Positions 14,130 through 62,368 of a DNA stretch of 64,000 bases are shown here, piece after piece. The first letter of the stretch is position 1; each line of letters begins with the position of its first letter. The notes below the pieces were generated by a model. The model saw nothing but the letters and a program-made list of their open reading frames with translations, did not search any database and had not been told where the DNA came from. The position numbers and the translations under genes are program-made. Origin of the DNA: Kudoa neothunni (lineage: Eukaryota > Animalia > Cnidaria); NCBI GenBank assembly GCA_964304625.1, contig OZ199838.1, forward strand, positions 62,001-126,000, read 5' to 3'.

Positions 14130-17100
14130 ATGTTCAATCAATTAATATGTAAACAACATTATTTGTTAGAGTGACTAATTAGTTGCGTAGACTCCGTGTT
14201 ATTGGTAACAGTGTTATCTTATTCCATTGATGATAAAACCCGTGAAGAAATAATGACGAAGTGCAAACGATATGAAAAACTAAGGAAAGACTATTTGAGT
14301 GCATTCAATAAACTGGAAACTCTAGCTAATGAGACAGCTCCAAAAGTGGCTATAATTCAATCAATGAAGAAGAGTTATGAATCCAATAAACACCTTTGTA
14401 CAACAGAAAATCTATCCAAAATAAATTATATCGACCAAAAAAATAAGTATAAAACACCATAAATACGATGCAATAAAAGAATTTCAAGCAATTGGCCGCC
14501 ATCTCCCGAATTCTACTCATTATCCTGGGGCTAACACATGTTGCGCTGTGGATAACATATGCTACTTAAATTGGATTAATTCATTCCAATTGATAAATGA
14601 TGTTGAAGCCGAAATTAAGAAGAGTCATAAATATTTAAATGACTCCAGTTCAATGAAACATTATATAAATAGCAATAATGTTTCCAAATGTCGTTTTTCT
14701 GAAGAAAGACGGAAGCTGCTACCTTTACTTGATGAATTACAAAAAACCATAGATAAATTTAACAACCATAAATCAATAATAGAAAGATTTCCAGAACGAA
14801 AACGATGCAAATTTGACAATATTCAGGGGATAGCGGAATCAGTTAATAACAAAATTAAAGAATATACTCAATACTATAATCAAATGATGAGTGAATTGGT
14901 TCCACATTTCAAAAACATTAAACCTCAGCTACAAGCTTTTATCACATCGAATTATCCAGAATTGTTCAATATGTACTTGTTGAATTCTCAAAATTTCACT
15001 ACTACTCTAAATAATATGGATAATGAGAGAGAGTTGGTCGACAAAGAAGCTGAAATTCAAAAAATTGCTAACAAATGCAGAAGAAATTTGGTCATCAACG
15101 AAATCTTATCTCTCACAAGATTTGTCGACTCAATTGACACAAAAAATTAATGAACTAAAAAAAGTGCTCGATTCGTATAAAAATCAAAAATCCCAAATTC
15201 AACAAGTTAAAAGCAACCGTTCGACAATTAGGCAAAATATACAAGAATTATTCCAAGTTACCAACAAGGCCATTCACGATATAACATCTATAAAAACCAA
15301 AGTTGATGATTTTATAGCACGAATCGAACAATTCAATTCAAGAAACGACTCGAGTAAGCGTTTGCAAGATGGTATAACATTAAAGGAAAATATCCAAGAT
15401 TTTTTGGATAACACAAAAGTTTCATTTGATAAAACATTAAAATTAAAGTTGGAACAAGTGAAAACATTGAATGATGGAATTAACGAAAATATTGGAAAAT
15501 TTGCAAACAACACTCAACCAATTGAAAAATGATAGTCAACAAACTTTAGAAACCTTTCAGACATTAAAATCCGACATCGAAACTCTAACAACAAAGAAAA
15601 TTCCCGAATATCTAAAACAATATAATAAAGAAAAATTGGACGCAAAATTCGCCGTGGAAAATCCAACCAACATATTGAATGATATTAATATTCGAACCGA
15701 GAAATTGATTAAAACTTTGGCATCCCATGAATCCCAAATTGAAAATAAACAATTAATAGCAATAGAAAATAGTTTGACAAAAGCAAATGAAAACTCTAAA
15801 ACAAATGAAGGATAACAATGATGGTTTCAAATGGTCACTCACAAGAATTATGTCCTCATTTCTCAAAACTAAAGCTGATAAATTATGCACCATGTTTTCT
15901 GATTTTTTCGGCGTTGCCGAAAGTGAAATAAGCCAAACGTTATCAAAAATTCAGGATTTAAAATCTAAACTTGTTAATGTTCAATCCGAAATAAACAAGA
16001 ATAGAGCACTCTTGAATGAAATCAGTACACTTTCCCAAAAATTAGCCAATGATTATACCAGTATTGTGGAAGCGAAAACTAGCCTATTAACTAAGACAAA
16101 TGAAAGGCCTGATACATTTGAATCATTCATGGAAACTGAAAAATCAAGTTTAAATTTTAATCTCGAAAGAGACTCTAAAAAACTTTCTGAAGATATCAAC
16201 AAATATGAAAAATCATTTGATACTCTTGGGAAAACTGTTGGGCATGCTGTTACTGAGATTTTTAAGGAAATTAATAATATTAAATCATTTGAAGGTAGTT
16301 ACGAAACAGCCTTTAAGAATATTGAAAATGTACATGAGAGTATGATGGATTCTCTTGGCTATGGATTGCGATTAGTCGAAATCAAGGATCAAAGTCGTTA
16401 CGATCCCATAAAAGAAGAACTCAAAAATTTATTTAAAAATTACCGAGAAACACTCGAAAAACAGAAAGATGTCCATAAAATAGAGGAAGAGTATTATAAA
16501 AAATCCATCGAAGAAGCTGGCAAAAAGGTAGATGTAATTAAAAAATTTAGTGCTAATCAAAAAATTATGAAACTACTGCAAGGAAAATACTCGACAGATA
16601 ATAATTTTTCGAAATTCCTCACCTTGCTACATGGACGTGCTACCTCATTGCCTCAAAAAGAGGATATACTGAAAAACCTTGAAAGCAAATATTTTTCAAT
16701 TTCAAACAGTTATCTCAAGAATAACATAACCTTGAAAGCCACCGAAAGTGCCATTACTAGTCTTCTTCGAGTCTATGATTTAGTTAATAATGATGAATCT
16801 GCGTTACCCGATATTGACAATGTGAATGTGATCGCTGATTTGAAGAAAAATTTTGATTTATTCAAAACTACAACTGATACTATGGAAGAGGAATTGGCAC
16901 AATTATTGGCTATCAAAAATACCCTAAGTAGTGAGAATGATGAAGAAATACGAAATATTGAGGGACACTCCCGAAGTGTTTCGATTGAAAAAAATAAACT
17001 TCAATCATTCCTTGTGGATCTGGGTGCATTCATGGAAAAAGCACCTATGATAAAAGAAGTTAACGAACAACTCACTGGAAAAAAGGAAGTACTTGATAGT

Positions 17101-18021
17101 TTCATGAAAACTTCCGATTCTGAATACGAAAAAACCGTTGATTTGTTGGCGGGGAAAAAAAAAGAGATATCAACTTCTGGTCAGTCACAGATTGAGTTTT
17201 TAAATAGAGAAGAGTCTGCATATTTAAAAAAGTACCAAGAATACAAAGCCGAACATGAGAAAATTGCAGCTAAAGGCGACGATAGAGATACTGAGATAAC
17301 TAACGAGATGAAAGTGAAAACTTCTAAACTGGAAACTCAAAAAGAAAGTTTGAAGAAAATTTTGGATGAGAATAAAAATTTAATTACCGCGTCTATTTTG
17401 GCAGCATCTTCGCATTATGATAATGAAAAAAGTAGGCTTGAAGAGGAATACACTAAACAAAAATCTAAAGCCACCGACATTAAACAACAAATCGAAGCAT
17501 TTTTAATGAAATTTGATTTGGAAACTGATGATAAAAAGTTTGATCGATTGGTAATGGAATTCAATGAACTTACCTTAGGAATCGATAGTTTCCTCAATAC
17601 AAATAAAAGTTTTGTTCAAATTAGCGAATACAATGTCCAAATCGAAGCCACTATTCCAACCGAAGTAGGAGACTTTATGAGAGATCTTGAGGATGCTATA
17701 AATATGGATAAAAATAATGAAAAGGATTTAAACAATTCACCATCAACTGAAACAACTGAGACTTCCACCGAAACGAAACATACAGTCAATACTTTTGAGG
17801 AACCCGTTGACACAGATGATTATTTGGCGGGACCATCTAATGACGCCGCAGCCCTAGGAGTGTTTAACGATGTATCATCAAAAGATTATTTCAAGATTAT
17901 TATGGCCATTGGTGCTGTGGTCTTGGTTGCTATGGCAATCACTGGTGCTGTAACGCGATACAAAAGCATCAAAAAGAATGATATTTACAATAAATGCGAA
18001 AATATTTTTGTCAAAGCATGA
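14130..18021 (+). CDS. ~1290-aa secreted alpha-helical/coiled-coil type-I membrane protein (needs four +1 frame corrections)
   Basis: ATG 14130, 42-nt intron 14149-14190, signal peptide MFNQLIYSVLLVTVLS; five ORFs in successive +1 frames; S/T/E stalk, TM IIMAIGAVVLVAMAITGAV, short tail. Confidence 0.8.
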
Positions 18022-18293: not shown

Positions 18294-19701
18294 TTAATCT
18301 TTTTATTCCTGTTGTGCGGTATATTGAACATTAACTTCTCCTTCGTTTAAAATGAGCATTGGACTATTGTTTCGCATTCGTTACAAACACATAATTTTAA
18401 CCCAATTAAATGTATAAAAACCGTTATTACATTTTTTAAGAAATTTTATGTATAAAAAATTTCATTAACAATATTCAATTCTCCATATCACATTCGTCCT
18501 AAAAGTAATATGTTAATTTTTATACCGAATTATATTATTTTTTGGAACCAAAATTTTTACAGTTACAATATGTTGTTAATTAAATTGGACTCTTTAAATT
18601 TTAAGGAACTTATTATTATCTGAAATGATACGATTTTAAGTCTTGTCAGTAAACTGAACGACAGGAACACATAAACCTATTTTTGGACAATCGCAATGGA
18701 TTACGACATTTGTAACGATGAGGATAAAACTAGAAAAAGAACTTCGGAAATTATAGTGCTACCTGATGTCGACATATCCGAACCGGATACATATTCTGAA
18801 GACGATACAACATTTACATCATCAATATTGAAAAAAGTTTCAGATGCGGAAGAATGTTCATCATCCGACGATTCTGACGCTGAAATTGACATTGGCCTTC
18901 AATGGAAGAAACAAGGTATCAGTTCAAATTTACCAGAGGAATTGTACAACTTAAACGACGAATTTGAAAAGTCAGATCATTTAATTCACCCCATCGATTA
19001 TTTCAACCAATTTGTTGACGATGATTTTATTGAATTAATTGTAAACGAATCAAATTGATATGCCACACAAAATAATTCGAATTTCAAGACAAACAGTTTA
19101 GAAATTAAAATTTATTTGGGAGTCATAATTTTAATGGGGATTGTACGGATGCCCCGTTACCGATGCTATTGGTCCAACCATTTCAATTATTTACCTATTT
19201 CGGATGTACTTTCTAGAGACAGTTTTGAGCAACTCTCAAAATTTTTACATTTTAATAATAATGACAATGAAACAAACGATCAGTCTTCCCATACGTTTGA
19301 TCGGTTTGTCAAAATTAGACCTTTGTTAGAGCACTTGAGGCTTGAATTTTTAAAAATCACTCCGGAGAGCATAAATTCAGTCGACGAAAAATTAATTCCC
19401 TTTAAGGGTAAGTGCCGGACAAAACAGTATATATCAAATAAACCGACCAAATGGGACTTCAAAGTTTTTGCTAGATGTGGAATAAGTGGGATAGTGCATG
19501 ATTTTCATTTGTATAATGGAAAATCGCCTGTTGTGCAAGAAAGCTGTGGTTTGGTTTCCAGGGATTTTGTAATAAAATTATGTGAAAAACTTCCAAAGAA
19601 TACGATGTTTCAATTGTATTTCGACAACTGGTTCACATCATTCTGGATGCAACTTATATTGAAAAAAAGGGGAATATATTCGATGGGGACTATTAGAAAT
19701 A
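18294..19701 (+). mobile_element. 3'-truncated piggyBac
   Basis: Transposase ORFs 18696-19058 and 19116-19700 (SVDEKLIPFKG, YFDNWFTS, GTIR); cut by pogo element; left limit approximate. Confidence 0.88.
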
Positions 19702-20630
19702 CAGTAAGTAACCAATTTCACGCACTTTTTAAAAACCTATTTAGTTAGAATGTCGATCTGTCATTGTTTATATAATATTTTACTTATAATATTTCAATCA
19801 AAATTTTTATAAAAATTATTTTAAAAAGTTGCTAAATAACGTTAATAAAAATCGCGTGATTGACCAATCCACGCACTTTTTTCTGGTATTTCTTGTTTAT
19901 TATTTAGTTAAGTCAATATTTAATGCCATAAAACTGCCAATGTATCGCATTTTTAAATATTTATTATCTCGACTCCTAACGGTATCCTGAAGATAAAAAT
20001 TAAAATAATCAAAATCTATAAATGTTTGTAGAATCTAAAGATAGAAATTATTTACGCACAGGACAATTTAATTCTGTTGATGAAGATGTATATGAATGGA
20101 TTAGGTGGATACGAAGAAAAAAGATTGTAGTAGGCGTCGTCATGATAATCATCAAGAGAAATCAATTAGCCAAAGAAAAATGTTTACGTTCGTGTGCAAT
20201 TCGTTGGGGGTTTCGCTCTTTTAAAAAAAGGTCCAACATTAAAAAATCAAATTTTATTAGTTCGTCTACTGTTACTACATCTGAAACTACTTCGTAATAG
20301 ACCAATTAAATCAGAACATTTTTTAAAAGATACTCCGAAAATTTTATTTACAATGTAGACGAAACTACCCAATTCTACCGATAGCAACAAGAAGTGTATT
20401 TCATAGATCGATGAAAAATATTTTTGTGCTGTTAACACGTTACTCGAGTTTTAACTATCGTTTAAAAATTAATATATGGTTAATTAGTCTTTATAAACGC
20501 AATTTAATCATTATTAAATGCCAATTTTTCCTGAAATAATTGAGCGCGAATGTGTGAAATTGGGCTTGACCGGTTCTACGCACTTTTTTCCTTGCCCCCG
20601 AGGGGATTACGTGAAATTGTTTTCTTACTG
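19702..20630 (+). mobile_element. Internally deleted pogo/Tigger element, copy 1
   Basis: TIRs cagtaagtaaccaatttcacg / cgtgaaattgttttcttactg; TA on left; CENP-B-like HTH remnant VDEDVYEWI; homologous to 62534-63543. Confidence 0.85.
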
Positions 20631-23600
20631 TGGTCCAGTTCCTTTAGATATTTCACATGTAACTGTGGAATCATCATTCAAATTTAATGGCAACTTGAAT
20701 GCGCTGTGGGCTGTTCTACCATCTGGAAGTAAAGTAGCGACAATGTCTGAAGAAGCAACAACCAAAACAATTTTTGACTAACTTCTCAGCTCTGCTAATA
20801 ACAAGTTAATAATAAATGTTCTCCCTATTCCACCAGGAGTAGTATCTATAAAGAAGATATGATCATGTGCATTACCATTGTTAACATTATCCATCATGGA
20901 GTTAAATGAATAAAATTAATCTTTCATTAGTTTTGGTTTGTTAACTAACGCAAACTCTCTTTGAATTTCGTTGGAATATGGTTATCAAACGTTCTACCGA
21001 TTGATGGAAACCCCTATTTATCCAATGTTTCACCTCTCATCTCGATAACTATATTTTCGATATCGGTAAGTGCCATGTTGGAAACTATTGAGTTATATTC
21101 CACATGATCGCCAGGATTTTGTAACTGTATTTGATGTTGATAGTCTTCACACATATCAATTCCAAGTTTCATCCACAAATTGTGTGGACAACTCAATTCG
21201 CATGTTCTTAGAAATAGATCGAAAAGTCGTTATAATTGACGTGGTGTATTAGTAACAATAGCTTCGTTTAAGTGTTCTCTCAATGATTACCATCTTGAAG
21301 CGTACCACGTTTCATACATACCTCTCTATATGCTGAGTGCAGTTGACCATCAAATAATCGAAGATCTTGAAAACACTCTGGTCCTGTAATTTCATGTAAA
21401 AACATTCACTATACTTCGGATGTACAGTGTAAGCTCTTCCCAGCGTATTATCAAATTTTACATCGGCATGACCCTCCGCAGAAGTGTTTCTCTACAGAGG
21501 TTCCCATACCCCCTAGGGATGTGAAGAGTCATCATTGGAGGTGCGGGAGTCATTCAAAAATAAATTTAAAATTTAATCTTAGTTTATTCATTTCGTAATT
21601 TTCGTTAGTCCCCGTTTAAATCATGTAAGGGCGTAATGCGTACAATAATATTTCTGGTTGTTTTAATATCAATCAGTTTTGATTCAAAAATGGGATTTGA
21701 TAACTTATTTAATTTATAATTTATTCCGTTTGATTCTACGAAATAGCGCAGTGAGGAAATAGTTTATATTAGGCCTGCTCAACCTACAAAATCTAACTAT
21801 CGCTATTTTCATGTAAAATCGTAACTTTGTTATCTTTCAAAATAATATATTTATATGCTTAAGTTGTAATTAGGTTGTCAGCATTTTTGTCTACTTAGAA
21901 ATAATCTCTATCCATAAAAATACAACCACAATGTGGTTTAAACTTTGTCTTCTGTCCAAATTTTAGATCCATCATTTTATTGTATATGATTTATCATGTT
22001 ACATTTTAAGTTTTGTGCTTGAATTTATACCTGGCGTTTAATAAGAATTTTAACTAAATTTTCTTGAAAAATATTGGTACAACAAAAATCCAAGCATTTA
22101 TTTGTACATTTAAGTAGATGAATGTCAATTTTAACAGAATAATTAGTTTTTTTATTCAGGTACATTAAGGTAGCATCTGTTTTGAATTTTCGGAATCCTT
22201 CTTAACCCATTTTCTCTATGTTTAAATTAAAATATGACTTAATATAGAGTGAGGAATTCGATTGGTTTTTCCGCACTAGATGATATATGATACGAGCTTA
22301 TCGACTTCATTATGTACAAATAATAAGTATCGGAAGTCATTAAACCCCGAAAATTATTTTCATGTTTCATATTCCAACAAAATCTCTTGCTTTGAATTAC
22401 TTATGAAAACCCAGCGAGAGAAAGAGAGACGCCAGATCAAATAAATACTAAATAACAGTTGATTTTGAAATAATGTTTCTTATGAACTATGCAAATTGAT
22501 TATTTTTAATTGGCTCATTTAATTTTTACCTTTAAGCACAGCGTTTATTTAAGCGACCATAATTTTTATAGTCTAATATTAAGTTAATATTTATTTTTTA
22601 CGTATAATATTTTGGAATAATTATAATAACATAATTTATTAGAATTATTTATTACTTTACATAAAAATGGTATATATAAACAGGAATGAATAATAGCTCC
22701 AATCATTGAGTGTTAATTCATGAGGAGTGAAAAGATAATGTTCATCCTTTTTCAATTATACATTGCAAATTGAGTTAAAAAACATTTTGGTTTTAATTTA
22801 TTTTAGAAGTAAATGGGGGAATTTGAAGTTAAAATCTAAACTAAAATAATACAAATACGATTTTAAGACATTTTTCGTTGGTATTATTTTCGCATTTAAA
22901 TATAAAGAATAATTGAGTCTTGTCGTTCATATAGTTCATATAGAGGAGGTAGTGCGAAATGAGCGCGGAAATTAGAATGGGAATGCGGATGTAAAATTTG
23001 TAGGGAAACACTGCTCTACAGGAATTCCTCTCTTTCGTCTAATTCATTTGCTATCTTTCCAAATGAGATAAGAGGGAAGTTGGTTATATAATACAGTTTG
23101 TGTCAACGAATCATTCTGGCAAAATTTGAAAAACGCTGTCTAAATTATATTTTTTGGATTTTGAATCTGATCCACTAATGTTTCTTCGTTGAAATATATC
23201 CCCTGTCCATTCTCCATATGGACACTTAAATGTTGGATTGCCGGATATCGATTATGTATATCAAAACCAAAAGTCCTCCAAAATGCCCCCAGCTACTTAT
23301 ATATCGTTATGTTTGGTAATTGGTGACTTCGTCAGCATTATTTGGCTGATTAACACAATATTTTGCATCATCGAACCCTTTGTTACATATTTACGAACGT
23401 ATTTAATGGAATTGACAGAGTTACAATACTCAACGTTTATATGTGCATTAAATATCTTCGATAATAACGGACAATGTGGTATAATCCATGTATTATTGAC
23501 GACTACATCATGACCATTCCTCATCTTGAGAGTTGTAGAGAATCCGCAATGACCAGATTGTCGTCTTCTGTAAAGCGGATAGCCATTTTCATCAGTTCTG

Positions 23601-25500
23601 GTTTCTACAATAAAACGTTTCGGATACTTCTTTGTACATTTACCTCCCTTCATTTATGGACTTTGTAGATTTTCTATACCACATGGATCATGAACCATTT
23701 GTTTACTTATAATCTGAGATAACTATGGATCTTTAGTTTGATCCGGTAGTTCAGCCGATATAAATTTATCCGCGTCATTTGGATGTAATTTTCTTTGAGC
23801 AATAATAATATGTGAACATGTGGCAGACCTCTTTCCTGCCATTCAATAGTATACATGTAGCACTGCACCTGGCCAAAAATCTTGATTTTCGTGAACAATT
23901 TTATGAGTGCCGATAACTTCAAATTAAACACTCTAGCCATTAGATCATGTCTTTCTTTAGCAGCCTGACCAGTGAATAATTCGCCCGTAACATCACTTCA
24001 CAACGGATTACACATGAACGTAATAAAAAGATCTGGACGACCGAAACATCGAACATAGTTCATCTCATCTTGCTTTTTTTCGTGCAAATCGCGGGGCGAC
24101 CCTGTGTAACTGGATGGAAGAATACACGATTTCCCCCGCTCCATATGAGTACCACCATTGCATATACTACACTACTTTCTTAAATGTATATAAGAGTCAA
24201 CACGAAACTCCTTCTGATGAGCTCTAATGTAACATAATCTCTCAGACTCCAACTTAGCAAACATATCCACAGCATATTGTTGATACAATGCCTGGAAATG
24301 GTGTAATGCGTTGAAATTATTCTCTCTCATCATAAAATGAAAAACATAAAAATCTTTACATGAGACAGCTTTGTTTGTCCCAACCCAAAGAATACCAAAG
24401 TGATAACCATCTTCATCATTAATATGAATTAATGGGTATTGCAATAGATCATATGATCGATGTGTATTATGGATTCGTTAGAGTACATTCTGTTTAGTTC
24501 TCAAAACAATGTCTCTTTTCCCATGTTGTTGATCTGACATAACAACGGCAACATCATTGCATAGTGGAACATTAAATCGTCTTTTGTGTTCTCCTTCGGG
24601 ACGATTATCAGCGTCAATAACTATTTTAAAATCATGCATAGATTGCATTTACAACGCATATTTGAAGCTACCAATATATCTGTGATGCATATATAACTTG
24701 TGTTGCAGTTCCAGAACAATATCATATCTCAATTCGGGATATATGCTCGTTCTGCTCTGAGACTGTAAATTATGATCCTCCACAGAGCACAACTGTAAGA
24801 ACTTTGGTTCCTCAATGTCCGGAGATAATAGGGATCCTATTCTATGACAAATTTGGCCCCCAACTTTGAATGTGGGCATAAAACCAGGTTCACAAACGAT
24901 TTCTGCCCCAAATGATGACATTTGAAATGCATTATTATATTTCCTGATGTTTTTCAAAAAGTGTTTAGGATCATCGGTATCTCCATTTAACAAAATTCTC
25001 AATAACGACGGAGGTTCAGGTGAAACAACTAACAACACTTTCCCCCCAGAACGACATTAACCAATCGATTCGCTTTGCCATTTTTTAACAAAGCATATTA
25101 GACAGACATCGTTCATTTTTCCAATATTTATATTTTTATCGCTTGAATAACTGGCCTGGGGACATAACTCAAAGCAGCCATATTCCATGATACACCGATT
25201 AAAATATTGTCTCTTTGATAACGTTGAACCTATATATTCTGTGATGGTTCCGTTATATTTTCATGCTGACAATTTATTTGATTTTTCTGACTCATTTGTT
25301 TTTGTTCTTCCAGGAATCTCACTACATTTTGTGGAATTGTGAGAATGCGTCGATTCTTGTTTGCTATAAGGGTTCTTTGTCCCGTTGCTCTCTACTTTGT
25401 TCTCTATCTTGAGATCTTCTAACTTGCTGACGTAATCTATTCGATTCTCACCGCGAGCTTCTTTCTTCAATGGTCTCTTTCTGTCTTCTATTGGAATTTC
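20631..25500 (-). mobile_element. Decayed autonomous Helitron (Rep-Pif1 helicase)
   Basis: Rep motifs GRPDLFITFMCNP, IEWQERGLPHVH, SIKYVRKYVTKG; helicase motifs PGGIGRTF, ASSDIVATLL, GRTAHSAFKLP; many stops and frameshifts; 3' part lost. Confidence 0.93.
21482..23013. mobile_element. Non-autonomous hAT-type element inserted in the Helitron ORF
   Basis: TIRs aagtgtttctctaca / tgtagggaaacactg; 8-bp TSD ctccgcag / ctctacag; removing it restores RGIPVEGHADVKFDNTLGR. Confidence 0.85.
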
Positions 25501-27614: not shown

Positions 27615-28580
27615 TTATTTTCGAATTGGTGTTATCCTATTAATTCTCATGTTACACCCTGTAATGCAATTACAAAAATTTTCCCACCCAACATATTCCA
27701 GGGTATGCAATGCGTACCTTGTATACCCGGACGACAAATGCCTGAGCTCAGCCATTCCGCAGCATAAAGACGAAATGTAATGTAACAGTTCATTGATTGA
27801 TTGAGAGAATTTTAGTTGTTTAACAGTAACGTTGTTGATTAAGGTGTGGCAGTTAGGGCATATTGATTTCTTTACTATGTTTCCAACTCTCGTTATCGAC
27901 CACACTCATGAGTTCTGGGCAGATACGCATGCGATAACATGTATCATGTAAACCATATCTCTTCATAAGATAGCGCTGATAATGGCATAAAGATATAAAT
28001 GAGAAGCGGCACTTAACGGGTTTCAATTAATTTTCGAAGAATATATAAATATTTTACATATTCTTTTTCTATTTTTCCTTTCACATCTTGACAAACATAA
28101 TCAGCTACAACTCCGCCTATTTCCGTATTCCCAGTAGCTGTATTCCAAAACGTAGATAACTATAAAATCAGCCGTTTACCAAGCTAAACTACCAGTATTA
28201 TAAGTGTACCAGGCACATTATGCATTGAGGATAATCACCTTTCATATCAATCACTATGATTTTAATGAGTTCAAATAATTAATATTCAGAGATGACTTTT
28301 TACCCTCGTTTTCTTTACAGTGAACTTCGAGCATGCAAACGTATTGTGGAATCATTATTTCAGCTAATTGTTTGTCGGCATGCTTCATTGTTTCGTCAAC
28401 ACTTACAAGGCACTACAGATACGTGTTAGCTAGTTTTACTCCAAAAAAATAATTATTTACTCCTATTTTTCTTGTAATGCAAATATAGGTTACTATCTTG
28501 AAAAAGGCTGATCGATAATTATTCCTTAGTTCAGTTGAATAAGCCTCTGGTGACATCTTTGTTGGACTTACACTTCATTA
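27615..28580 (-). CDS. Multi-saposin-B (SAPLIP/prosaposin-like) protein, at least 3 domains, needs frame corrections
   Basis: Saposin-type Cys spacing: C..CLVSVDE..IPQYVCMLEVHC; CIMC..YVC..C..DTCYRMRIC; CPNC..LC..FCNCITGC; introns of 46-48 nt just before Cys4 in two domains; 5' end not found. Confidence 0.65.
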
Positions 28581-34212: not shown

Positions 34213-36669
34213 TTAAACGCTCATTTCAGTTTCAGCTGAAAGTCCCAATTATCTAAGAATTTGATTGCCTATGTTTTTGGAAACTCGCAGTGTAATGAAA
34301 ATATTGCATCCTCATGTACATATATTGAGTTTTCTCTTTCTTATATTTTTAGATTGTATCCAAATTCAAATTAATTACTATCACATGTTTATAGACATTT
34401 ATATTTTTATCACTATGGGAACAGAAAAAGTTTACTAGCAATAAATAAGATAAGAATTCGTGTCTCAATAAAATTTTTAGGGCAGTTTTAATTTTTATAG
34501 AATCTCGGTTTCGGCAACAAAACTTTTTATTTTTTACACATATCAATGAATTATTTAACTTTTTATAAGTGTGGAAATGAATCTCTGAACTTTGGTTCCG
34601 ATATAGTTTCCTAAAAAATTAGTGTTTCAACAGACTCTCCCTCCAGAATGATTCAACTCGATGCTATCGACGTTACAACTGTACTCAACGGATTATTATA
34701 CTCATTTGCAATGCTATGCAACATCAATTAGCTTTATTAGGGAAATATTTTCTGATTTCTCGAAAACTTAAAGTATTTTTAATCCTAATTATTAATTAAA
34801 AGATAAGCGAAACTAAATTTGTATTTTGCATATATAGAAGATATTTATCTAAGAAATGATAAGATTGAATTATTATTTTAGTAGAGAAAGCGCGTCTGCA
34901 AAATAGGCACAGTCAAATTTTTAGCCTACTTGTATGCGACTTCTTCCACAGTCTTCGTCATTATGGCGACTGCAAAGAGCACACATCCCAGTATCCATAC
35001 TAAACGATGTTAATACAACTATATATGTCTATTAACTTTACCATTGTGAAGTTTTGTTAGCATTACCTTCTAGCTCAAGTTAACTCAATCAGATTACTTA
35101 TATTATCAATAATTCTAGGTTTTTAAACCAGATTAATTTAATCTTTTCAATCATTTCTTAACGATTAAGAGGTTGATCAGTATTTGTTATTATTGGTGAA
35201 ACTTTTATTTCGACGATAAAAATTGCGTTAGTTAATAATAAGTAGCAATATGATTATGTATTATATTTTATATACACGAGGTTATTGTATTCGTGTATTA
35301 AAAGTGAACCTATATTTTTATATTTTAGGTTCATTATTCTTTGGCATAAGGTGTTCATTTATTGATGACATCGGAAAATTAGAGTGATTGCGAGTATTAC
35401 TTAAAATCAATTATTTTTGTATTTATTCTGACTTTAATTGTATTAAAATTAAAATTTACAGTCGTTATTACATGATAACTTCATTAATAATTTTGTTTTA
35501 GTTATAATTAGCGATAGTAACTGCTATAATTTCAAAGCAGTGACCTAATTACAAATAACAACTTGTAATTTTCGCGATATTAGTAATCCTTATATCCCAA
35601 GTAATTTTTAAAAGGTAATAAATATTTTTTAATCATTATAAACCATCAATATTAAAAAGAATATATTAAATTATTTATTCAAATGTTCTTTACGATATCA
35701 GTTGACAGTTTGGAAACATCCATTGTTTGGAGACTTCCCCGTTTATGAACCCCTCCAAAGTTAGCGCTACACTACTCAAATCAATTCTGCACAACCTCGC
35801 AAATACGATAACGATGTGTAACACCCTCTAGTAAATCCTAAATAAAGCTTTGCACTCAATCCAAATAAAAAATACATGGTATGAGAAGGAACAGACAGTT
35901 GTGAGGCTAAACCAGTTATTATCCCTATTTTTAAATTTAAGGTATTGTTATAGAAAACTTTAATTTATAATAATTCAAAAGATTTTATTTATGAGCCGTC
36001 TAATCCTTTCTAATCAATTATTGATTTCGAACTCTGTGTATTCTAGGTATATGTGTTGCTTTCGATACACTGAATTTGGCTGTAGAAATGAACCGCTCAT
36101 TCGTAATCCTCTTGAGACCGCACAAAGATACGAAATAATTAGTTAAATTGATTAGTTCGTAATTTTCTTATCATACAAAAACGAATAATACGTTCATTAT
36201 TTAAACTTAAAGGTTTAAGATTTATTAAGTTTCGTCTTCAAGTAATCCCTTGTATTGAACTGTCCTTTAAATAAATATAATAAAGTATTTTTAATAACTA
36301 ACAAATTTTGATGCTAAAAATGCTCAAATAATATGAAATTATTTTTATCAACATTATTACGGAATTAAGTTTTCATTAATAAACATCCACCGAAATAAAT
36401 TTTATTAATAGACTTTTTGGTACAATGATACATGTTGTGTTTTCATTTTTTTGTTAATTATCACTGTTAAGCCCAGTTTAGGAATCAGTTTATCAAATGA
36501 TGATCAATAATTGCATTTAATAAAAGAAGTATTTAAACCGAAAAAATTAATAATACTAAAAATAGTTATATTGCTTAATGTAAGAAAAAATGTAAATGAA
36601 AATATTTTATGTGTATGGAGAAATCTAGTGTATATAGAGCTCTTGTCTGTCGGTGTATGTTTATTTCCG

Positions 36670-44551: not shown

Positions 44552-46043
44552 ATGAGTTTATTTTTATTAAAGATATGTTTTGTGCTTTATTTTCCAAATT
44601 TTTTGTCAGGTAAAAAATTTTTTCTTCCATATTGATAATTTTTTAGATCCAATATTACCCTCTTATGAAAGAGATGAAGGAGATTGGCCTGTGGATGTGC
44701 AAAGGAATATGAACAATGTTATCGATCGATGGTTCATTGACATACAAGATGCTAAATGCAAACCTCTCGAATATCGTGGAATCAACGGAAACTATAACAA
44801 TTTTGCCTCAAAAGGACTATGTGAACTTTATGGTATTTTTTCTAAATTAATGCAAATTTATTACCACTTCTTGTAGGACAGTTGACAAAAAAAGAAAAAC
44901 TTGAAGGGTGCAAAAAACCTTATCATCCAGGACACTGTGTAAAAAACACCTCAACAAAGGATCAGTTCTATTTTGATCAAACAAAAGCCGATTGTGTTTC
45001 TTTCCAATATAATGGATGTGGAGGAAGCTTCAATCGTTACAATGATAAAGAAGAATGCATGTTATACTGCTTAAGTAAAAAAATATAAAAATTTCTTTAG
45101 AATTAGATCATATTTTGTAGATAAAAGGAATGGCGGGCTTACAAATGCTGATGATGAAAAAATAAAAAAAAGTTGATGCAGACTCAATTTACCAAGTACC
45201 GAATACATTGGACTGCGAGCTTAGACCTGATGTTAAAGACAAAGACCCAAGCACTTCAATTATTGCTGATATTAAGAAAAATAAGTGTGCTCTTGCAGCA
45301 GTCTCATTAGACACAAATACAAGAGGGATCTTCAAATCGTTTGGTGAATGTGTTAAAAAATGTTTTCGTATATTTATTATTTATATCATTATCTAATATA
45401 TTTTAGCAAAGGCGAGTACAGATAAGGGGTGATGGTGTAACTGAATTTAATAAGATAGCAGCTGCATGCGAAGGTGGTCCATTTCAAGTTGCATTATCTA
45501 ACCCAATAAACCCAAAAAATGGTGAGGTTGTGTTCCGATACTACTATCACACCGTAGAAAAAGTTTGTAAACGCATGGAAACAAAAGAATCCACATTTGA
45601 TTCTACTAAAAATAATTTTTCCAACTATGGAAATGTGTCATAGCTATTGCGGAGCAGGTACGCATGTTAATTCCTGTTAAAAAATTGAAATTATATAAAA
45701 GTTTCTATTATATTGTGTTTATAAACTATTTATAAGTTTGAAATAAATTTAGAGAATTACCAAAAGAAAATTGTGATCGAAGAAACTTGCGTTCAAATCA
45801 AACAGGGTGTTGCGGCTGACGAACAAAACTCATTTAAAGTCAAAAGATATTATTATGACCGATTCTCATAATAAATGCAAAGCTTTTTATTATAAGGGAT
45901 ATGATGGGAACTCTAATAATTTTAAAACGGGAGATGAATGCAAAACGATCTGTGGTGGCCATTACAACCAAGGAGTACCTGTTGATGTAGACAATAATGT
46001 AAAACAGTTCATGACTAAAATCGTATCGCATTTTCATATTTAA
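44552..46043 (+). CDS. Secreted five-domain Kunitz/BPTI protein (needs four +1 frame corrections)
   Basis: Signal peptide MSLFLLKICFVLYFPNFLS; Kunitz motifs YRGINGNYNNF, FQYNGCGGSFNRY, RYYY..C, YKGYDGNSNNF; 6 exons. Confidence 0.85.
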
Positions 46044-46989: not shown

Positions 46990-49640
46990 AGTTATTGCTA
47001 ATTTTTAATGATAACCGTAAATTGATCTTAACTTATGCTGCGCTTATCTCAGTGGTTAAAATTGCATTATAAAAAGGTTTATTAAATCTATCCCCTAGAA
47101 TACATGAAAGTATACATCTATTTTTTCATTTTTGAAACATTTTCGGCTATGATAAATTATTCCTAATACCATCCAAAGCCGAGCAATTCGCGCTAGAAAC
47201 CTATAATACTACTTGTATTCTCGGAACTTGTGAGACAAAATTATCTTTTGAATATGACAAATATATCATAATATTAATTTATTTACCCTAATAATAATTT
47301 TAATTTTGTCTTTAAAATTAAGAAAATTTTTTAAAGTCAATTAATTATTACATCTATACGTAACACTTTTCTAAACAAACGTCGACATTGTTCGTATGCA
47401 GATAGTTGTATTGGTATGTTTTTGTTATATTATTTTGAACCAATTAAGAACGAATGACGGAAAACGGAAGGAAAATAAAAGCCAATCTTCAATAAGCCAT
47501 TTTAATAAATCATGAGGCTGAGATTATTCTTTCACAAATTTAGACAACATAATAATGCATGTTGTATATAACGCTAATCTAGTAAAGTTCAAATTCAACA
47601 TTGCGAGATATGGTAAAACAACCCATTCATCTGAATATTTAAAGCACTCAAGCTAGTTCATAAGAAGAAATATAAAAAAAATGAAAATTTGTTTGTCAAA
47701 GTGACTAATGTTAAAAAAATTGTATATGGAAAAGAAGAAACGACGAGTGTCAACTTATATGTATCTTGTTGAATAACAACGACATCAGATGTGGTCCCCA
47801 TATCAAAAAGAACGAAGATCCTTATACTTTACGATAGTTAGCTCATGAATTGGCTGATAGATAATCCTATTTTTAAATTGTTATATTAGATGAAAGAGTA
47901 TATTCATATAAAAGACAATATTTTCCAACGATTTTGATGATTTTATTTATCATTAAAAATGTGACTTTAAACTTTTATTGTTTGGTGACAAATTGTATAT
48001 TTTAGGTTAAATCCTATTTTGTGAAATATGCATTCACGTTTTTGTGTATTTTTCTTGTAATATGCATGATCAAGTACAATATTTTCAATATAAGTAGTGA
48101 AATTATCTAGAGTAATTGTTTCTTATCTATTCCTAGAATTATCGTATTATTGGGAGCCTAAAGTGGTACAAGTTAGTTGTTTCGAACAACCTCTATGTAT
48201 ACAGAATATCGATAAAAAAATCATGTGATTATTTAGTTACATCAATATCTATAAATCTGAACGATATTTCTATTGAAGAAGTCGAAAATTTATTTAAAGA
48301 AAAATATAAACATAGACTTAACAAAAACGGAATTTTAGGGAATACGGAATGTGGAAAAGAAAAAGTAAAAATATATTGTCACATTATAATACATTTATTT
48401 TATTAGGTTGCTATTATTGTCCCGTTCAAAAATAGACACAAACAAATGGGTGTGTTTTTGAGGCACATGCACCCATTCCTCCAAAAGCAAGATATTAATT
48501 ATAGGATTTTTCTAGTGAATCAAGTAAAAAATATAAAGGTTGAAACTATATTTTGAGAATATAATTAGACCAACGACCACCCATTTAACAAAGCTCTATT
48601 GTTAAATGTGGGATATCTGGAAAGTTTAAAATTAGGAAAATATGAATGTTTCATTTTTGCAGACATTGATTTGTTGCCCGAAAATGAGTTCAACCGATAT
48701 GATTGTTCCAATTCACCTGAACATTTTACCCAAAATATTAAATCGAATAATTACCAGTATTTTTATATCTATTACAATTAATACTTATAATATTTATAAG
48801 AATTTATTATGAAACATATTTCGGTGGAGTGGTAGGATTGTCACGAGAACACTTTGAAAAAGTGAATGGATTCTCTAATATTTTTTGGGGTTGGGGTGGT
48901 GAAGATGATGATCTATATAATCGGTAAGATAATGCCTCAGTTAATAGAAAAATAATTTAAATTTAGCATAATATCTAATGGATTTCGTTTATACAGGAAA
49001 AATCCATTATTAACACGTTACATTGATAATGTGAGGTATCACACCAGACATAGTGGTAAAAATCCCAAGAGGTAATAAAATGTTATAATTGTCATTATTT
49101 AATAATTATATGAAGGCTTAATATTTTAAATGAGATGAAAAATCTTGGGAATAAATCTGGATTGAATAATATTATATATAATATAACATCAATTAAAGAA
49201 TATATGCTATTCACCGAAATAAATGTTGATATAGAAGCCACATATAAGGATTATCTAACCAACTGGGCTCCTTTATTCTGATGGCTGGTTATCATATTAT
49301 GTTCAGTTGTTCATTTTTTTTTGTATTCTTTAAAAAATAACATACATAACAAAAGTATAACAAGAAATAATTTTGAGGATAATTTCTAATGTTCGTGGAA
49401 TTTATTGCTTAACATGTTTACGTACGCCTAGGATGTAACTGACCCCTTTTTATTCATTGTTTCGTAAATTGTAGTACTCTCGATATATTAAGAAATAACA
49501 AAATCTCTCTTGTTGTCTACATACTTTTTTTAAGTTTTTCTTATTATTTCTGACATCTAATAACTTATACAAAAATTTATATTTCAACATAGATAAAAAC
49601 CAAATTTTCGTGCATAACAAGGTCCAATGTACCCTATTGT
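46990..49640 (+). repeat. Segmental duplication copy 2
   Basis: Collinear with ~1450-6740 minus the piggyBac. Confidence 0.9.
47937..49281 (+). CDS. GT7 beta-1,4-glycosyltransferase, copy 2 (9 exons, intact)
   Basis: Same exon structure as copy 1; PFNKALLLNVG, FADID, YETYFGGV, WGWGGEDDDLYNR; TGA 49279-49281. Confidence 0.93.
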
Positions 49641-55800: not shown

Positions 55801-57145
55801 ACGCAGATATGTAACTCACTGAATAATACGACAAAAACCACGGGTTACGCGTTTTTAAAATAAAATAATTTTTCATTTTATTTTTAAGAATGAGTTCATC
55901 TTTTTGTAGGTATGTTAATGCAAGTATACGATATAATTATTTGAATTGCTGCGTTTGATTTTCTTTCTTCTGATATAGGTTGATAATTTGCCATGGATTT
56001 TGTCCAACTTGCGACCACATCATACGCTGGGTGTGAATGCTTTAGGTATACTACGTTAGATACCGATAGTTGAATATTATGCATTGAGAAGATCTAAAAT
56101 TTATTTTATTTTTCATAATCTCTACGTGTACTCTCTGAGCAGTGTGGACCATGCCTTTAATGTTATACATTAATGCCTGTTCAGTCCTGAAATAAGTCTC
56201 CTAATTCATCATATTTTTTTTCAGTAAAAATTAATATATCATAAATACCACTCTCTTGGTAACAATAATTTCAACATCGATGCATTTCGCAGGACTAATC
56301 GTATCAATCGAATTACGTCTCCCGCTTATTACCTATAAGTTTTTATAACGCAACAAATTTAAAAATTTTTATCATCAGAATTAATAATTTTCTCAAATAT
56401 TTTCATAGCGGAAGGTAACTTCATACCTTTAATTTGGACAACTATAATACATGTTTATATATAACTAATTAATGTGGCTACCTATAACTTTTGCGTGAAT
56501 CAACAAAGCTATTAAAAGTATGTTGAGATTTATCATTTCTCAAATTATTAGGTCCTAAAATAATATTGAAAATTACCATGGTTCAGGTGTTTTATCAAAT
56601 ATGAATCATTAATAATTAGATTTACGAGAATTAAGGGAAATTTTAAACAACATTAAAATAATGATAATCGTTTAAAAATATCTATTATGTTTTCATTAAA
56701 CATGAAAAACCAAAGATTACTTGCTTTACAGTAATGAACTAATGCTTCAATTGTGTCTTTATGTTTGTTATGCTATCGATATAATAAGTATTTTATGATA
56801 ATTTATTTGGGGATTATTACAATAATCTGATTTTAATAAAATAATAAGAAGGAAATAGCTATTGACATGGATCATAATGAAAAGCTAGGTATAGTTTTGA
56901 TTGTATTTAATTATTTTTAGTTCATCGCTACCGCTTCGAAGGTCCAAAAATAATTAAATACAACTGATTCTAAAAAATAAAGTTTAGACATAAACTGTAA
57001 ATAGGAGTTCCCGGGATTAAAAACTTCGGTGTCAATTGCCAGTGCTAAAACAAATATCCAAATTAATGCATTCTTATTGTTGTTTTAACTATCCTAGGTA
57101 AAAGTGCTCCGTGGGTTTTTAATTAATCATCAAAGATTCTACCAT
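49824..57145 (-). CDS. ADAM/reprolysin (M12B) protein with disintegrin and Cys-rich domains, catalytically inactive, no TM
   Basis: Exons encode CGDGVVDREQGEECDCG, CANEDCCTNCQ, GECYNGTC, VPDGYVCGESMVCVNGCC then stop; zinc motif reads AREIGNMLGLNK; 5' (signal/prodomain) exons less certain. Confidence 0.82.
50577..52821 (+). mobile_element. Full-length decayed piggyBac inside ADAM intron
   Basis: TTAA flanks; tttacacccc subterminal repeats; VCDNFCTS, GTMR, YNAIKEGVD, GRCQLC tail. Confidence 0.9.
52982..54234. mobile_element. Non-autonomous piggyBac inside ADAM intron
   Basis: TTAA|ctcttacagg ... cccgcgaggg|TTAA; subterminal palindrome ggggtccgcgcggatccc. Confidence 0.75.
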
Positions 57146-59589
57146 ATATATTATGAAAATTATATTATTTCTTGTAGTTGTTTTATTTAAATAAATAATT
57201 ACTTTGATTTGATTTGATGATAAACAAAAAAAATTTGATTCAATATAACGATAACATCCATTTCATTCTGATCATTAAAATTATTATTGTCATTGGTTTT
57301 CTAGTAATATAATCCAAAATAAACATTTTGACATCGAAATTATTTGAGACTTTTATCACAAAATATATGCTAACTCAATAAATTATTAAATTATAACTTT
57401 TTATAAAACTGACTAAAAATTGTAGGTAAATAAAATAAATTAGTCGTAGTTTTAAAAGTTTAAAGTACATAAGTTAAAAGCTTCATAGGTGTTGTTTGCA
57501 TACTTTACGAATCAGTCTAATTACGTTAAATAATCTCATTAAGAGACTACAACCTTATATGTTAATTTCGGAGTCGATGTCAAGTTAAAAGTTTCAAAAT
57601 TTTCCTATAAACACTTAATAATATTTCGTTTATAATATTTTAATTTTATAATAGACGGTTGAGAATATATTCATCTATTTACACACGTTATTTTAGTAGT
57701 TTAAGCTTTTAACACTGTTATTATCATATTTGTTATGATTGAAAATATTTTTCATTATATTAAAAATATATGTATTTTCCTTAAATTCATAATTTTTTAT
57801 TCGAAGTAATATATGCATGTTTTAATTAGGAAAACTATTTTTTATTCTTGTATTATATCGGAATAAAGATGTCTACAAAATCAGAATAATGAAATTTAGT
57901 ATAAACATTGAATGTATAAACGATAACCGGACAATTCTTAGGTAATTGTTATTTAGAATCATAATTAAATGATTTCAGAAAATGCATTTTCGTTCGTGAC
58001 AACATTTTTGCTAAATTTTGAATTATTTCGTGATTCGTATTTTCAAGCACTTTTGTAATTGTTTGGTGTTCGTTCCACCCTGACAGTTTAAAGTTAATCG
58101 TTTAAAAAATTGAGTATCGGGATACTTTTTCCTTAAAGGTGGAACTTTTTTGTTTGCTTTGTTGAGTGTACGTGCATGAAATTACAGAGTCGAACTAACA
58201 CTTGGAACGGTAATGGTAAAGGAGACGGCTACTAAATTCCAACCGATCAACTTCATTTATTTTCACCGATTCTTTCACGATAATTTTTCTTACAATTTTA
58301 AATGTTTGACAAGATCGTTCAATTCCCAACAAACTTAATTATAAATTTTAAGAAATCTTTGGATTAATCCTCCAGTTGTGTTATTTAAGAGTGTATTTTA
58401 TTAGGATTTAAGTTGTTACTTCCTATTTGTACCATGTATACCTCATAATTACACACTTTTCATTGTCCATAATGAATCAGATATTTTTCCCCGTAATCGG
58501 GTGGAATAATTCGCGTTAGTAGTAGAAAATATCAGAGGTAATAAGGTGGGATGTGGCATCTCAAAAACATTCTTCTGCGCATATTTTTTAACGATTGTTT
58601 ATAACAAAATAAATGAATACCGAGAAAAAGAATTCACGTAATTATGATATCATCTAATTTTGTAACAAAATTAGATGATACAACACCATCGGTACACGTG
58701 AAATCTCCGTTAAATTTCCAATGAATACGAATTTTATTTTGTATACATTAATTTTAAATTGATTATGCGCCTTAAAATCACCCTTAATAATGATTCGTTT
58801 TCAAAATTATATGATTTAGCCATTGAGTAAACTTCACGCATTTAATAATAATAACAACCTATCTTCTATATCTTTAATTATATATTTACCATAAACTTTT
58901 TTACTAACCTATCTTAATTAGTTAATACATATTTTAGTTTCTCTATTTTTTTAGGGGTAAATTTATTTTCAATAAAAGTATTTAGAATCATTTTATCATT
59001 TGATTTTTTATAGCAACCAAATAATTAGCTTTTTATTTTCATTACAACATTATTGAGTAAAAAAAAATTTATATCAATTAATTTTCCAATGCATATTTTA
59101 AAAAAAGCTAAGTACACGAAATAAAAAAATGTCATCCAAATTGCATTTATGTAATATAATGTACGTTATAAAACCAACCGGAATCCGTGTGTGTACACAT
59201 TTTTTATTCTTTATAGAAAGACATATCGTTCCATTTGGGCACACATATGGAAAGATAATTTTATTTTAACATTGAACTATACGTATACAATTATTGAAAA
59301 GTAATTTAATAATTGGACTAATTCAAATAAGGTAAGTTAAATTAGATTATGTAGCCCAGCATTAATATGAAATTAATTTGTTGATGTTTAACAAGATTAA
59401 TCATATTCATACAGTATGATTTAGAGATTACTGCAAACAACAAGGAGAAAATCGATATTTTATGAGCTCTAAATAGGAAATTTAAATGCCCAGTAGTGTT
59501 TATTCGTTTTTAAAAATATTATAAATAAGGATCTAATAAAATTTTGGACGCTTACGCTGGCTTTCCTTAATTTCAAATACAATTAAACC

Positions 59590-60138
59590 CAGGGCGTCCA
59601 CTGCTTGGTTTTTTGTGGTCACCTTGGGTTCTTAGGTTTTTTTTCATTCTTCTTTAAAATCTTGGGTTTTTACATAAAATCTGTAAACATTGAATAATAA
59701 TAATAATAAAACACAAATTTTATTATGTGCGACATTAATATTTATATTTTTAATAACGTATCCTACTCAGATTATATCGTGCAGGGTTTAAACATTTACG
59801 ATATTGACTGACGGTACAATTGTTCAATTAACATTGTCGCACATTTTTAGGAAATTTAACGTTATTTCAAAATATATCTTGAACTATGAATGGATTAATT
59901 CATTCATTCATTGTGAGCATATTGATCTATACTAGACATTAAGTTTGGATGAATGTTCGCGCCGAAAAACTATAATAATAATAATACGACGATAAATTTA
60001 AATTTAATATCTGTAGAGGTATTTGAAGACTCGGAAGATGATTAAAAACTTCAATAGATATGATTCTATTTTTTGTTGAACTTTAAACGAGCGTTTTTCT
60101 CGACCTTGGGTTTTTCTAAAGTCCCGCTGGCAGCCCTG
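59590..60138 (+). mobile_element. hAT MITE of the same family as 36670-40244
   Basis: Starts CAGGGCGTCCACTGCTTGG, ends GGCAGCCCTG; perfect 8-bp TSD ATTAAACC. Confidence 0.92.
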
Positions 60139-60448
60139 ATTAAACCACCCAAAACAACGATTCTTAGACCTGATGCGCACGCAAGATACCAAATTTAATA
60201 GACAAATTTCCTTTTTTACAAAACTTTGTCATTCGTCACTGCCTTAATTTTATGAAAACCTTCTAACTTATTTTATTATGAAAATATTGAAAAGGCATGA
60301 GATCGATATACAACCGCATTTTATAATTTCAACTAGGAGATATAACTTTGCAATCCAGTCAAAAAATGACCATCAATTTCATTGGGAATCTCAACAAAAT
60401 ACTCAATGACACATTCGTAATTTTTTCGTGCGGGATTAATGCGAAAGA

Positions 60449-62368
60449 ATGAAAAAAGGCGCCACACCACTTTGTCGAGATGTTCACGCACGCGTGTTTT
60501 ACACAAGTCATTATGTCGAACGTTGACTTGGAGATGCGCCTTAAGGCATTGGATTGCATTTTACCATTACAAATAACACATATAGTGGAGAATAATTTTC
60601 CAAATTACAAGAGTAGTTCCATAGGAATTTTAATATGATTTTTAATGGATTATAAATCAAGTTGAAATCGACGATAACGATTGCGTGTGGCTAATATATT
60701 CTGAACATATTTATCTGTGGAATTATGCCCTAAACGACAAATTTAGGGTTATCCTATGACCAAATGATTTTCTATATAATCGCGTTATAGACATATGAAT
60801 ATTTTGAGCTGCCAATACCATCTCCATCATCTTCGGCTGCCAACAACGAACAATGGTTTTTTTCTGTTCACCAACAACACTTCGAATAAAAGATCCCACT
60901 CATTCTACAAAAATACACCCACACTTCGTAGTGAATCAGCTCCTACATATCAAAAAATCTGCCTTATACATCCATTCGGATGGGCAGATAAGGTATTGGT
61001 CTAATATTAGGAGTAGAAATTCCTTTGTTGATCAAAAAATTGAGTTGTATGATCAACTGGATTGCGTCACAAATTAGCATTATTTGATGTATTTATTATA
61101 ATCAAAGATTTCATGAATTTGAATTTTATTTACTATCCAGATTGGCGACATTTTGATAAAAACAACCGACGACAACTTCTACTGTGTCCAGATTAAAAAT
61201 GTTAGAAATTTAATTTCTCTTTTATCCAATCGATAAATCCACTCTAGAACGGCTTTGTGATTGACACCATTGAAAACACCACGAATAATGGTATCACTGG
61301 AAAACTATCACATTTTATTTCTCGCGGAATCAAATCATTTCTAACCAAAGCAAAATCAAAAGACAAAAATAATAATTTAGTTTGCAGTGATAATCCGTCC
61401 GATTATTACCACAGTGGAAGAGTATATTTTCTCTTTTATTATTATTACTAAATTAAATTATTATTAAATTAAATTATTATTATTATTAATTATTACTAAA
61501 TTAAATTATTATTAAATTAAATTATTATTATTATTAATTATTATTATTATTACTAAATTAAATTATTATTATTATTAAATTAAATTATTATTATTATTAT
61601 TATTATAATAATTAAATTATTATTATTATGATTAAATTATTATTATTGTAATAATAATTATGTCGGATTACACCACTGTACTATTAATACTCATATTGTT
61701 AATTTTTAGAGGTGTCAAATTACCATGACAGAACTTAGTTATACTGATATAACAAGTGGACAGTCAAAGTTAGTATAATTAAAAATATTATATTTTTTAA
61801 TTGGGCAATCAAAAAAATTGAATATTTTAATTTTAGTAATAATTGTCTTCTTGTTTCTACACCAGTCCGAATTGTCTATCTACCGATTTGAACAAAAGAA
61901 TCATTGTGAAGTAATTAATTACATATTGTTTAGATATATAATTATCAATTAGAAAAATATTCACTATGACTGTTGCGAATATTATCCAAACTAATGTATG
62001 ACTGATTGTATTTATTTGTAATATTATTCAATTATTTTAGTTTTCACATTTGCAACTTGTTTATGATGAAATCAATCTTTTGAGTATAGCTACAGATAAG
62101 TATGTGGAATATGATAGTTAATTCATTCAATTAATATAATCCATTCCTGATAGTTGTTATCAATCGTATGCATTGGTGGAATGTAGAAAAACCTACCACT
62201 CTAAGCAATATTACACTTTTCAGATGTCACTTAGAAATGAACTCGATATCAGATTTTCTAATCTGATAGAGATATGTCCGAATTTTAGTCGAGTTCCATA
62301 TCTCAAAGTGATATCGTCTTCCAATCTGTTTGCTGTTACTGACGGTTATGGGATCTACTTCTATCACT
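60449..62368 (+). CDS. NUP133: Nucleoporin Nup133, N-terminal beta-propeller (partial; needs frame corrections)
   Basis: LPLQITHIV / IEIDDNDCVWLI..IYLW / FELPIP / DGQIRYW / amphipathic NNGITGKLSHFISRGIKSFL align in order with human Nup133 as recalled from memory (LPVKVMEAL, INIDEGGWACLV, EGSIRYW, ALPS helix); start codon uncertain. Confidence 0.75.
61437..61660. repeat. Compound (TTA)n / TTAAA microsatellite in a Nup133 intron
   Basis: Directly visible. Confidence 0.95.

What the first reader, a model, noticed from the sequence alone, without database searches (positions are those of the whole stretch)
14130..62368. Five unrelated, otherwise intact genes need single-nucleotide frame corrections, mostly net +1: possible recoding/editing system or assembly artefact
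Seen: the membrane-protein gene (4 sites), Kunitz gene (4), Nup133 (2 clear +1 plus 2 net +2/-1), saposin gene (3 +1 plus 1 net +2/-1) and ADAM 5' exons (at least 1) translate end-to-end only if single bases are skipped or, less often, added. Most sites lie at runs of A, T, G or C. These genes keep signal peptides, splice sites and Cys spacing and show no nonsense substitutions, unlike the transposases here, which are full of stops. Both GT7 genes and the last 2.2 kb of the membrane-protein gene need no correction. Inference: this is not ordinary pseudogenisation. Options are (a) homopolymer indel errors of an under-polished long-read assembly, the most parsimonious, or (b) biology: widespread +1 ribosomal frameshifting, transcriptional slippage or single-base indel RNA editing of nuclear mRNAs. 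No deterministic motif was found: CAA-AAA-A occurs at shift windows (14436, 15058, 60951) but also unshifted (16558).
Basis: partly seen in the sequence, partly recalled or inferred. Interest (0 to 1): 0.85.

Follow-up and report, generated by a model that had tools for sequence, protein, structure and literature searches.

The report
Assembly indel errors, not recoding
The apparent frameshifts in these parasite genes are one-letter sequencing errors in a genome assembled from very few long reads, so they are an ordinary artefact and not a new editing or recoding system.

Summary
The breaks are in the assembled sequence, but they are assembly errors. Contigs of three DNA runs from one sample carry the frame-keeping letter count at all three 'Nup133' breaks tested (60857, 60952, 61070) and differ from the window in the same way at non-coding sites. 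A second assembled copy of 57290 onward lies across a 200-N scaffold gap. It differs by 8 substitutions but 56 one-base indels (45 extra in the window copy, 54 in homopolymers) and lacks all five breaks in that gene. No membrane-gene or Kunitz break is shared by paralogs; two membrane paralogs are fully open and one has 36 mixed-sign breaks. These two genes were not read-tested, so their status is inferred. The saposin-like gene needs no correction once four micro-introns are spliced. The genome fits Kudoa neothunni, assembled from about 7x HiFi reads (PMC12239612); this identity is inferred. The 'Nup133' name was not confirmed. The scan noted the same +1 pattern elsewhere in this genome (unchecked notes). 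Verdict: not a real feature.

The parts
14130..18021 (+). Large membrane/surface-protein gene of a multicopy family (about 1280 aa in open paralogs); four net +1 breaks in the 5' 40%
   Evidence: open paralogs L002 (1276 aa, 59% identical) and L007 (1284 aa)
14433..14455 (+). Membrane gene break 1 (net +1)
   Evidence: not shared with the same sign by any paralog
15058..15063 (+). Membrane gene break 2 (net +1, A run)
15494..15500 (+). Membrane gene break 3 (net +1)
15789..15792 (+). Membrane gene break 4 (net +1)
44553..46043 (+). Multi-domain Kunitz gene, one of about 20 close paralogs; net +1 in exons near 45164, 45424, 45616, 45859 (possibly also near 46000) against all five paralogs compared
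   Evidence: (PF00014, E 1.9e-09)
55900..56540 (-). ADAM-like gene 5' exons; run contigs are one letter shorter than the window within about 56436-56513
   Evidence: table 8 (X3 record 19, X4 record 28; bracketed by X2 record 10 and X1 record 2); disintegrin hit for a downstream exon
60790..62368 (+).
57290..64000 (+). Start of a 30.7-kb segment assembled twice, either side of a 200-N gap (C1:149948-150147); the window copy carries most of the extra letters
57047..60768 (.). Non-coding one-letter errors of the same kind (57047, 57083, 58139, 60452, 60768), absent from the run contigs
   Evidence: table 4
27853..28574 (-). Saposin-like gene, 3' exons; open after four micro-introns, no frame correction needed
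34933..35000 (-). Upstream exon of the saposin-like gene, separated by an insert of about 6.3 kb that paralog L025 lacks
5200..6420 (+). GT7 copy 1 (control: true paralog pair, differences are substitutions)
48120..49290 (+). GT7 copy 2 (control)

Best explanation
The breaks are consensus errors. The genome was assembled from long reads at very low depth, so stretches of about 10-15 kb rest on one or two uncorrected reads and keep those reads' homopolymer length errors. Error density and direction therefore change from block to block, without regard to genes: mostly extra letters here, mixed elsewhere. Shown: the DNA runs and the second copy lack the errors at the sites tested. Inferred: the single-read mechanism, the species (Kudoa neothunni), and that the membrane and Kunitz breaks are of the same kind.
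For:: at 60857, 60952 and 61070, runs X1, X2 and X3 show only the other letter count (depth_with equals depth). The same holds at non-coding 57047, 57083, 58139, 60452 and 60768 in two or three runs each, and the substitutions at 58664 and 60289 read as in the second copy. X3 and X4 hold 151-nt pieces, which points to short reads; 8 substitutions against 56 one-base indels; 54 are run-length changes; the rate rises from 0.2% per single base to 12-14% per run of 6-7; 54 fall in the first 13.2 kb and 2 in the last 17.4 kb; another near-identical pair (L025/L026) has 0 substitutions and 16 one-base indels in 3 kb; membrane paralogs carry 0, 0, 1, 2, 6, 12 and 36 breaks of mixed sign, none matching the window's. 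K. neothunni, 40.2 Mb, three chromosomes plus mitochondrion, k-mer coverage about seven, hifiasm-meta then YaHS; G000 is 40.26 Mb in 4 contigs. [quoted passage not shown]
Against: Only 55440-61430 could be laid on runs (one call), so the membrane and Kunitz breaks and 61862/61953 were not read-tested. The runs are contigs at depth 2-9, which drop rare variants, and all come from one sample. Eleven indel rows were not shown. The paper reports QV 48.5 for this assembly, far better than the local rate of about one error per 250 nt. One one-letter difference near 56046-56162 is seen in X1 and X3 but not in a depth-2 piece of X2, so some indels may be true alleles.
Confidence: 0.95

Rival explanations
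1. Some breaks, in the multicopy membrane and Kunitz genes, are real recent loss-of-function indels (young pseudogenes or broken alleles) in fast-turnover families.
For: Both belong to large families. dN/dS among membrane paralogs is about 0.7-1.0, so selection cannot be shown. These sites were not read-tested. With four indels and an assumed 8-10 neutral substitutions per indel (general knowledge), about 2 stops are expected at 5.5% per substitution, so seeing none is not decisive for one gene.
Against: All breaks in both genes are one letter and the same sign, as in the proven error block. There are no nonsense changes. Paralog L004 has 36 indels and 1 stop where about 16 would be expected by the same reckoning.
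Confidence: 0.04
2. Genome-wide +1 ribosomal frameshifting, transcriptional slippage or single-base indel RNA editing repairs the frames.
For: Most breaks in this window are net +1. Two of seven tested lie within one to three codons of a stop. No RNA run holds the stretch, so transcripts were not examined.
Against: All three mechanisms need the odd letter in the DNA, and the DNA runs lack it. The same indels lie in intergenic DNA and introns. The sites are private to each copy and of both signs. Five of seven breaks are 21-87 nt before the next stop, and no AAA-TAR motif is present.
Confidence: 0.01

Closest known systems
Homopolymer indel errors of low-coverage long-read (PacBio HiFi) consensus, with false duplication at contig ends
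   Same: One-base indels far outnumber substitutions, scale with run length, cluster in read-sized blocks, hit coding and non-coding DNA alike, and are absent from other DNA runs of the sample; the duplicate flanks a 200-N gap.
   Different: Nothing essential. The local rate (about 1 per 250 nt) is far above the published whole-assembly QV of 48.5.
Kudoa neothunni assembly jmKudNeot1 (Weber, Paulini, Blaxter 2025, PMC12239612)
   Same: 40.2 Mb, three chromosomes plus mitochondrion, N50 12.0 Mb, GC 30%, intron length 49 nt, from host-dominated reads at about 7x. G000: 40.26 Mb, 4 contigs, C1 17.15 Mb, C2 at least 11.96 Mb, introns of 46-50 nt, four holder runs of one sample, each with 830-920 million letters of contigs.
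   Different: The identity is inferred from these matches, not from a named sequence hit. The telomere motif was not found in the loci held. The paper does not report frameshifts in this assembly.
Euplotes stop-triggered +1/+2 ribosomal frameshifting (PMC10235951)
   Same: Many genes, several net +1 changes per gene.
   Different: There the shift sits at an in-frame UAA/UAG, mostly after AAA, and is encoded in the DNA. Here the letters are not in the DNA runs and most breaks lie tens of bases before a stop.
Insertion/deletion RNA editing (kinetoplastid, Physarum mitochondria) and transcriptional slippage (own knowledge; reviewed in PMC5009743, not read here)
   Same: Single-letter corrections, often at runs.
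   Different: These change RNA against an unchanged DNA template. Here the DNA runs already hold the frame-keeping sequence, all four letters and both signs are involved, and intergenic DNA is affected.

Membership tests
Low-coverage long-read assembly artefact | Other DNA reads of the same sample lack the assembled letter | tested here: met
   3 coding and 5 non-coding sites shown, in 2-3 runs each
Low-coverage long-read assembly artefact | Indels outnumber substitutions and rise with homopolymer length | tested here: met
Low-coverage long-read assembly artefact | Errors ignore gene boundaries and cluster in read-sized blocks | tested here: met
   54 in 13.2 kb, 2 in the next 17.4 kb; non-coding rows
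Low-coverage long-read assembly artefact | The source long reads show one or two reads under the error block | not testable with these tools
   only Logan contigs are served for these runs
Low-coverage long-read assembly artefact | Read test at the membrane-gene and Kunitz breaks | not tested
Euplotes-type ribosomal frameshifting | Shift at an in-frame TAA/TAG, usually after AAA | tested here: not met
   stops 9, 87, 30, 21, 30, 50 and 4 nt downstream, after CCA, AAT, AAA (stop TGA), GGA, GAA, GTC, AAT
Euplotes-type ribosomal frameshifting | Shift site present in genomic DNA | tested here: not met
Programmed frameshifting or editing in general | Sites conserved between homologues | tested here: not met
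Indel RNA editing or transcriptional slippage | DNA has the broken frame and RNA the open one | tested here: not met
   DNA side fails at the three sites tested; no RNA holder was available
Pseudogene decay | Nonsense and other substitutions accumulate with the indels | tested here: inconclusive
   not met for L004 (36 indels, 1 stop) or the duplicated block; too few events to decide for the window's membrane and Kunitz genes alone
Nup133/Nup155 family (name of the 60.8-62.4 kb gene) | Match to Nucleoporin_N (PF08801) or a known Nup133 | tested here: inconclusive
   no hit; the two hits are a repeat protein and a low-complexity protein. Single short exons of a fast-evolving lineage, so absence is weak.

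The most novel reading that the evidence does not exclude
A minority of sites not covered by reads (for example the membrane-gene break near 14450, three codons before a stop) is real in the DNA and is read through by +1 frameshifting or slippage in a myxozoan nuclear gene.
Probability: 0.01. Interest if true: 0.8.

Novelty: not a real feature. Interest (0 to 1): 0.05.

Why it matters
There is no new biology here. The practical point is for this genome: blocks with about one indel per 250 nt and at least one probable false duplication exist despite a published QV of 48.5. Frameshift, pseudogene, gene-loss and copy-number claims from this assembly, including other notes of this scan, need a short-read check first. 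Had recoding been real, it would have been a rare case of widespread nuclear recoding in an animal.

Tried and rejected
Sphaerospora molnari as source: 40.17 Mb but 40 contigs, rejected in favour of K. neothunni. First alignment of membrane paralogs had L002 in the wrong orientation; redone. dN/dS as a test of function: about 1 throughout the family, uninformative. A search for run-derived proteins spanning the membrane breaks found nothing. Naming the 'Nup133' gene failed in six searches. The 36100-34900 stretch, first taken for the saposin gene, showed no clear coding frame apart from its last exon. SapB_2 did not hit the window.

Full report
Setting. The window is AT-rich and lies at C1:62001-126000 of a 40,260,978-base genome in 4 contigs. 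Size, contig number, contig lengths, GC and intron lengths fit Kudoa neothunni. That myxozoan genome was assembled from tuna HiFi reads at k-mer coverage about seven, with hifiasm-meta and YaHS, giving 40.2 Mb, three chromosomes and a mitochondrion (PMC12239612). The four runs that hold this DNA come from one 2021 sample and each has 830-920 million letters of contigs, as host-dominated data would. The identity is an inference; no named sequence hit was obtained. S. molnari (40 contigs) fits less well.

Check of the observation. The membrane-protein gene has four net +1 breaks against two fully open paralogs. The Kunitz gene has four exonic net +1 differences against all five paralogs compared, and perhaps a fifth in the tail. 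The gene labelled Nup133 has five one-letter differences in exons; its name could not be confirmed. The ADAM-like 5' part has one surplus letter, bracketed to about 56436-56513. The saposin-like gene I found needs none: introns of 48, 50, 50 and 46 nt give an open frame, three of them at the same positions as in paralog L025. Introns whose lengths are not multiples of three would look like +1 and +2 shifts to a reader without tools.

Test 1, a second copy in the assembly. Window 57290 onward (30.7 kb) is assembled twice, on either side of exactly 200 N. The copies differ by 8 substitutions and 56 one-base indels, 45 of them extra letters in the window's copy. Of the 56, 54 change a homopolymer length, against 48% for random insertions. 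The rate climbs from 0.2% per single base to 12-14% per run of six or seven. Fifty-four fall in the first 13.2 kb and two in the remaining 17.4 kb. The second copy lacks all five differences in the 'Nup133' gene and reads openly through the first three for 134 codons. Another near-identical pair elsewhere on C1 shows 0 substitutions and 16 one-base indels in 3 kb. True paralog pairs look the opposite: the GT7 twins have 72 substitutions and 2 indels.

Test 2, DNA runs. Laid on 55440-61430, runs X1, X2 and X3 show only the frame-keeping letter count at 60857, 60952 and 61070. Two or three runs each do the same at non-coding 57047, 57083, 58139, 60452 and 60768, and the two substitutions read as in the second copy. 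Positions 57047 and 57083 lie outside the duplicated segment, so the errors are not just differences between two real copies. X3 and X4 contain 151-nt pieces, which suggests short reads, a different technology from the assembly's (inference). The runs probably come from the assembly's own sample. That is the right control for an assembly error, but it is not biological replication. Contigs drop rare variants, depth is 2-9, and eleven rows were hidden. Contig depth in X1 over 60440-61430 (5.5-8.9) is similar to that over unique DNA (5.6-7.6), which is weakly in line with a false duplication; the tool warns that this depth is not a copy number.

Test 3, paralogs. Seven membrane-gene paralogs carry 0, 0, 1, 2, 6, 12 and 36 breaks of mixed sign, none at the window's positions with the window's sign. 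L004 has 36 indels and one stop. With 5.5% of random substitutions making a stop and 8-10 neutral substitutions per indel (general knowledge, an assumption), about 16 stops would be expected, so decay does not explain L004. Programmed sites would be expected to be shared among copies, and they are not.

Mechanism. Shown: the assembled letters at the tested sites are not the ones in the sample's DNA runs, and the error pattern depends on run length and comes in blocks. Inferred: those blocks rest on one or two uncorrected long reads. HiFi and ONT reads have indel rates two orders of magnitude above short reads (PMC13456413), and a single read's bias would explain the local excess of +1. Also inferred: a Merqury QV computed on the assembly's own reads would count such copied errors as supported, which would reconcile QV 48.5 with the local rate. 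The paper passages I read do not say which reads were used.

Rivals. Real broken alleles remain possible for the membrane and Kunitz genes, which were not read-tested (about 0.04 overall). Recoding, slippage or editing need the odd letter in DNA and fail at all three coding sites tested. The Euplotes rule, a shift at an in-frame TAA/TAG mostly after AAA (PMC10235951), is not met: five of seven breaks lie 21-87 nt before the next stop. No RNA run holds the stretch, so transcripts were not seen.

Limits and handling. Spliced models were searched exon by exon and the joined step was left out. Earlier notes of this scan describe the same +1 pattern in other windows of this genome; they are unchecked, and I did not count them as support.

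Verdict. It is an assembly artefact: not a real feature, interest 0.05.

Noticed in passing
window 57290-64000 and C1:119290-180786: 30.7-kb segment assembled twice around a 200-N gap; probably a false duplication left after purging, which would double-count every gene in it.
   Followed up: partly
L025/L026 (C1:10.64-10.66 Mb): Inverted near-identical pair with a saposin-like gene: 0 substitutions and 16 one-base indels in 3 kb; possibly another false duplication or a very recent one.
   Followed up: partly
L004 (C1:17134053-17140998): Membrane-gene paralog near the end of C1 with 36 mixed-sign one-base breaks, about 1% indel error; a very poor consensus block.
   Followed up: partly
window 32386-37580 and C1:51318-56492: 5.2-kb duplicate, 97.9% identical with differences mostly substitutions at the flanks and an identical 1.6-kb core; looks like a real segmental duplicate.
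   Followed up: partly
window 28620-34900 (minus): Insert of about 6.3 kb with piggyBac-like transposase remnants, apparently inside an intron of the saposin-like gene; a similar-sized gap separates the same parts in paralog L024, and L025/L026 lack it.
   Followed up: partly
window 14130-18021 and L002-L008: Family of at least eight giant (about 1280 aa) proteins with a C-terminal hydrophobic segment, no significant Pfam family, no homologue found for the piece searched, and dN/dS of 0.7-1.0 between paralogs; candidate fast-evolving surface proteins.
   Followed up: partly
window 44553-46043: Kunitz family with about 20 paralogs at 77-81% and about 20 more at 67-73% DNA identity, a large expansion for a reduced genome.
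   Followed up: no
Exact row not shown.
   Followed up: no
window 60790-62368: The gene called Nup133 has an open exon in the second copy but no family match in any library tried; its identity is open.
   Followed up: partly
window 61440-61660: AT-rich minisatellite inside an intron, with related arrays on C1 and C3; left out of the reads call because of the long-repeat rule.
   Followed up: no
window 7630-8421, 18675-19745, 20700-25500, 38084-40004, 50891-52473: Tc1/IS630-like, piggyBac-like, Helitron-like and hAT-like transposon remnants, recognised by eye from translations; most carry stops.
   Followed up: no
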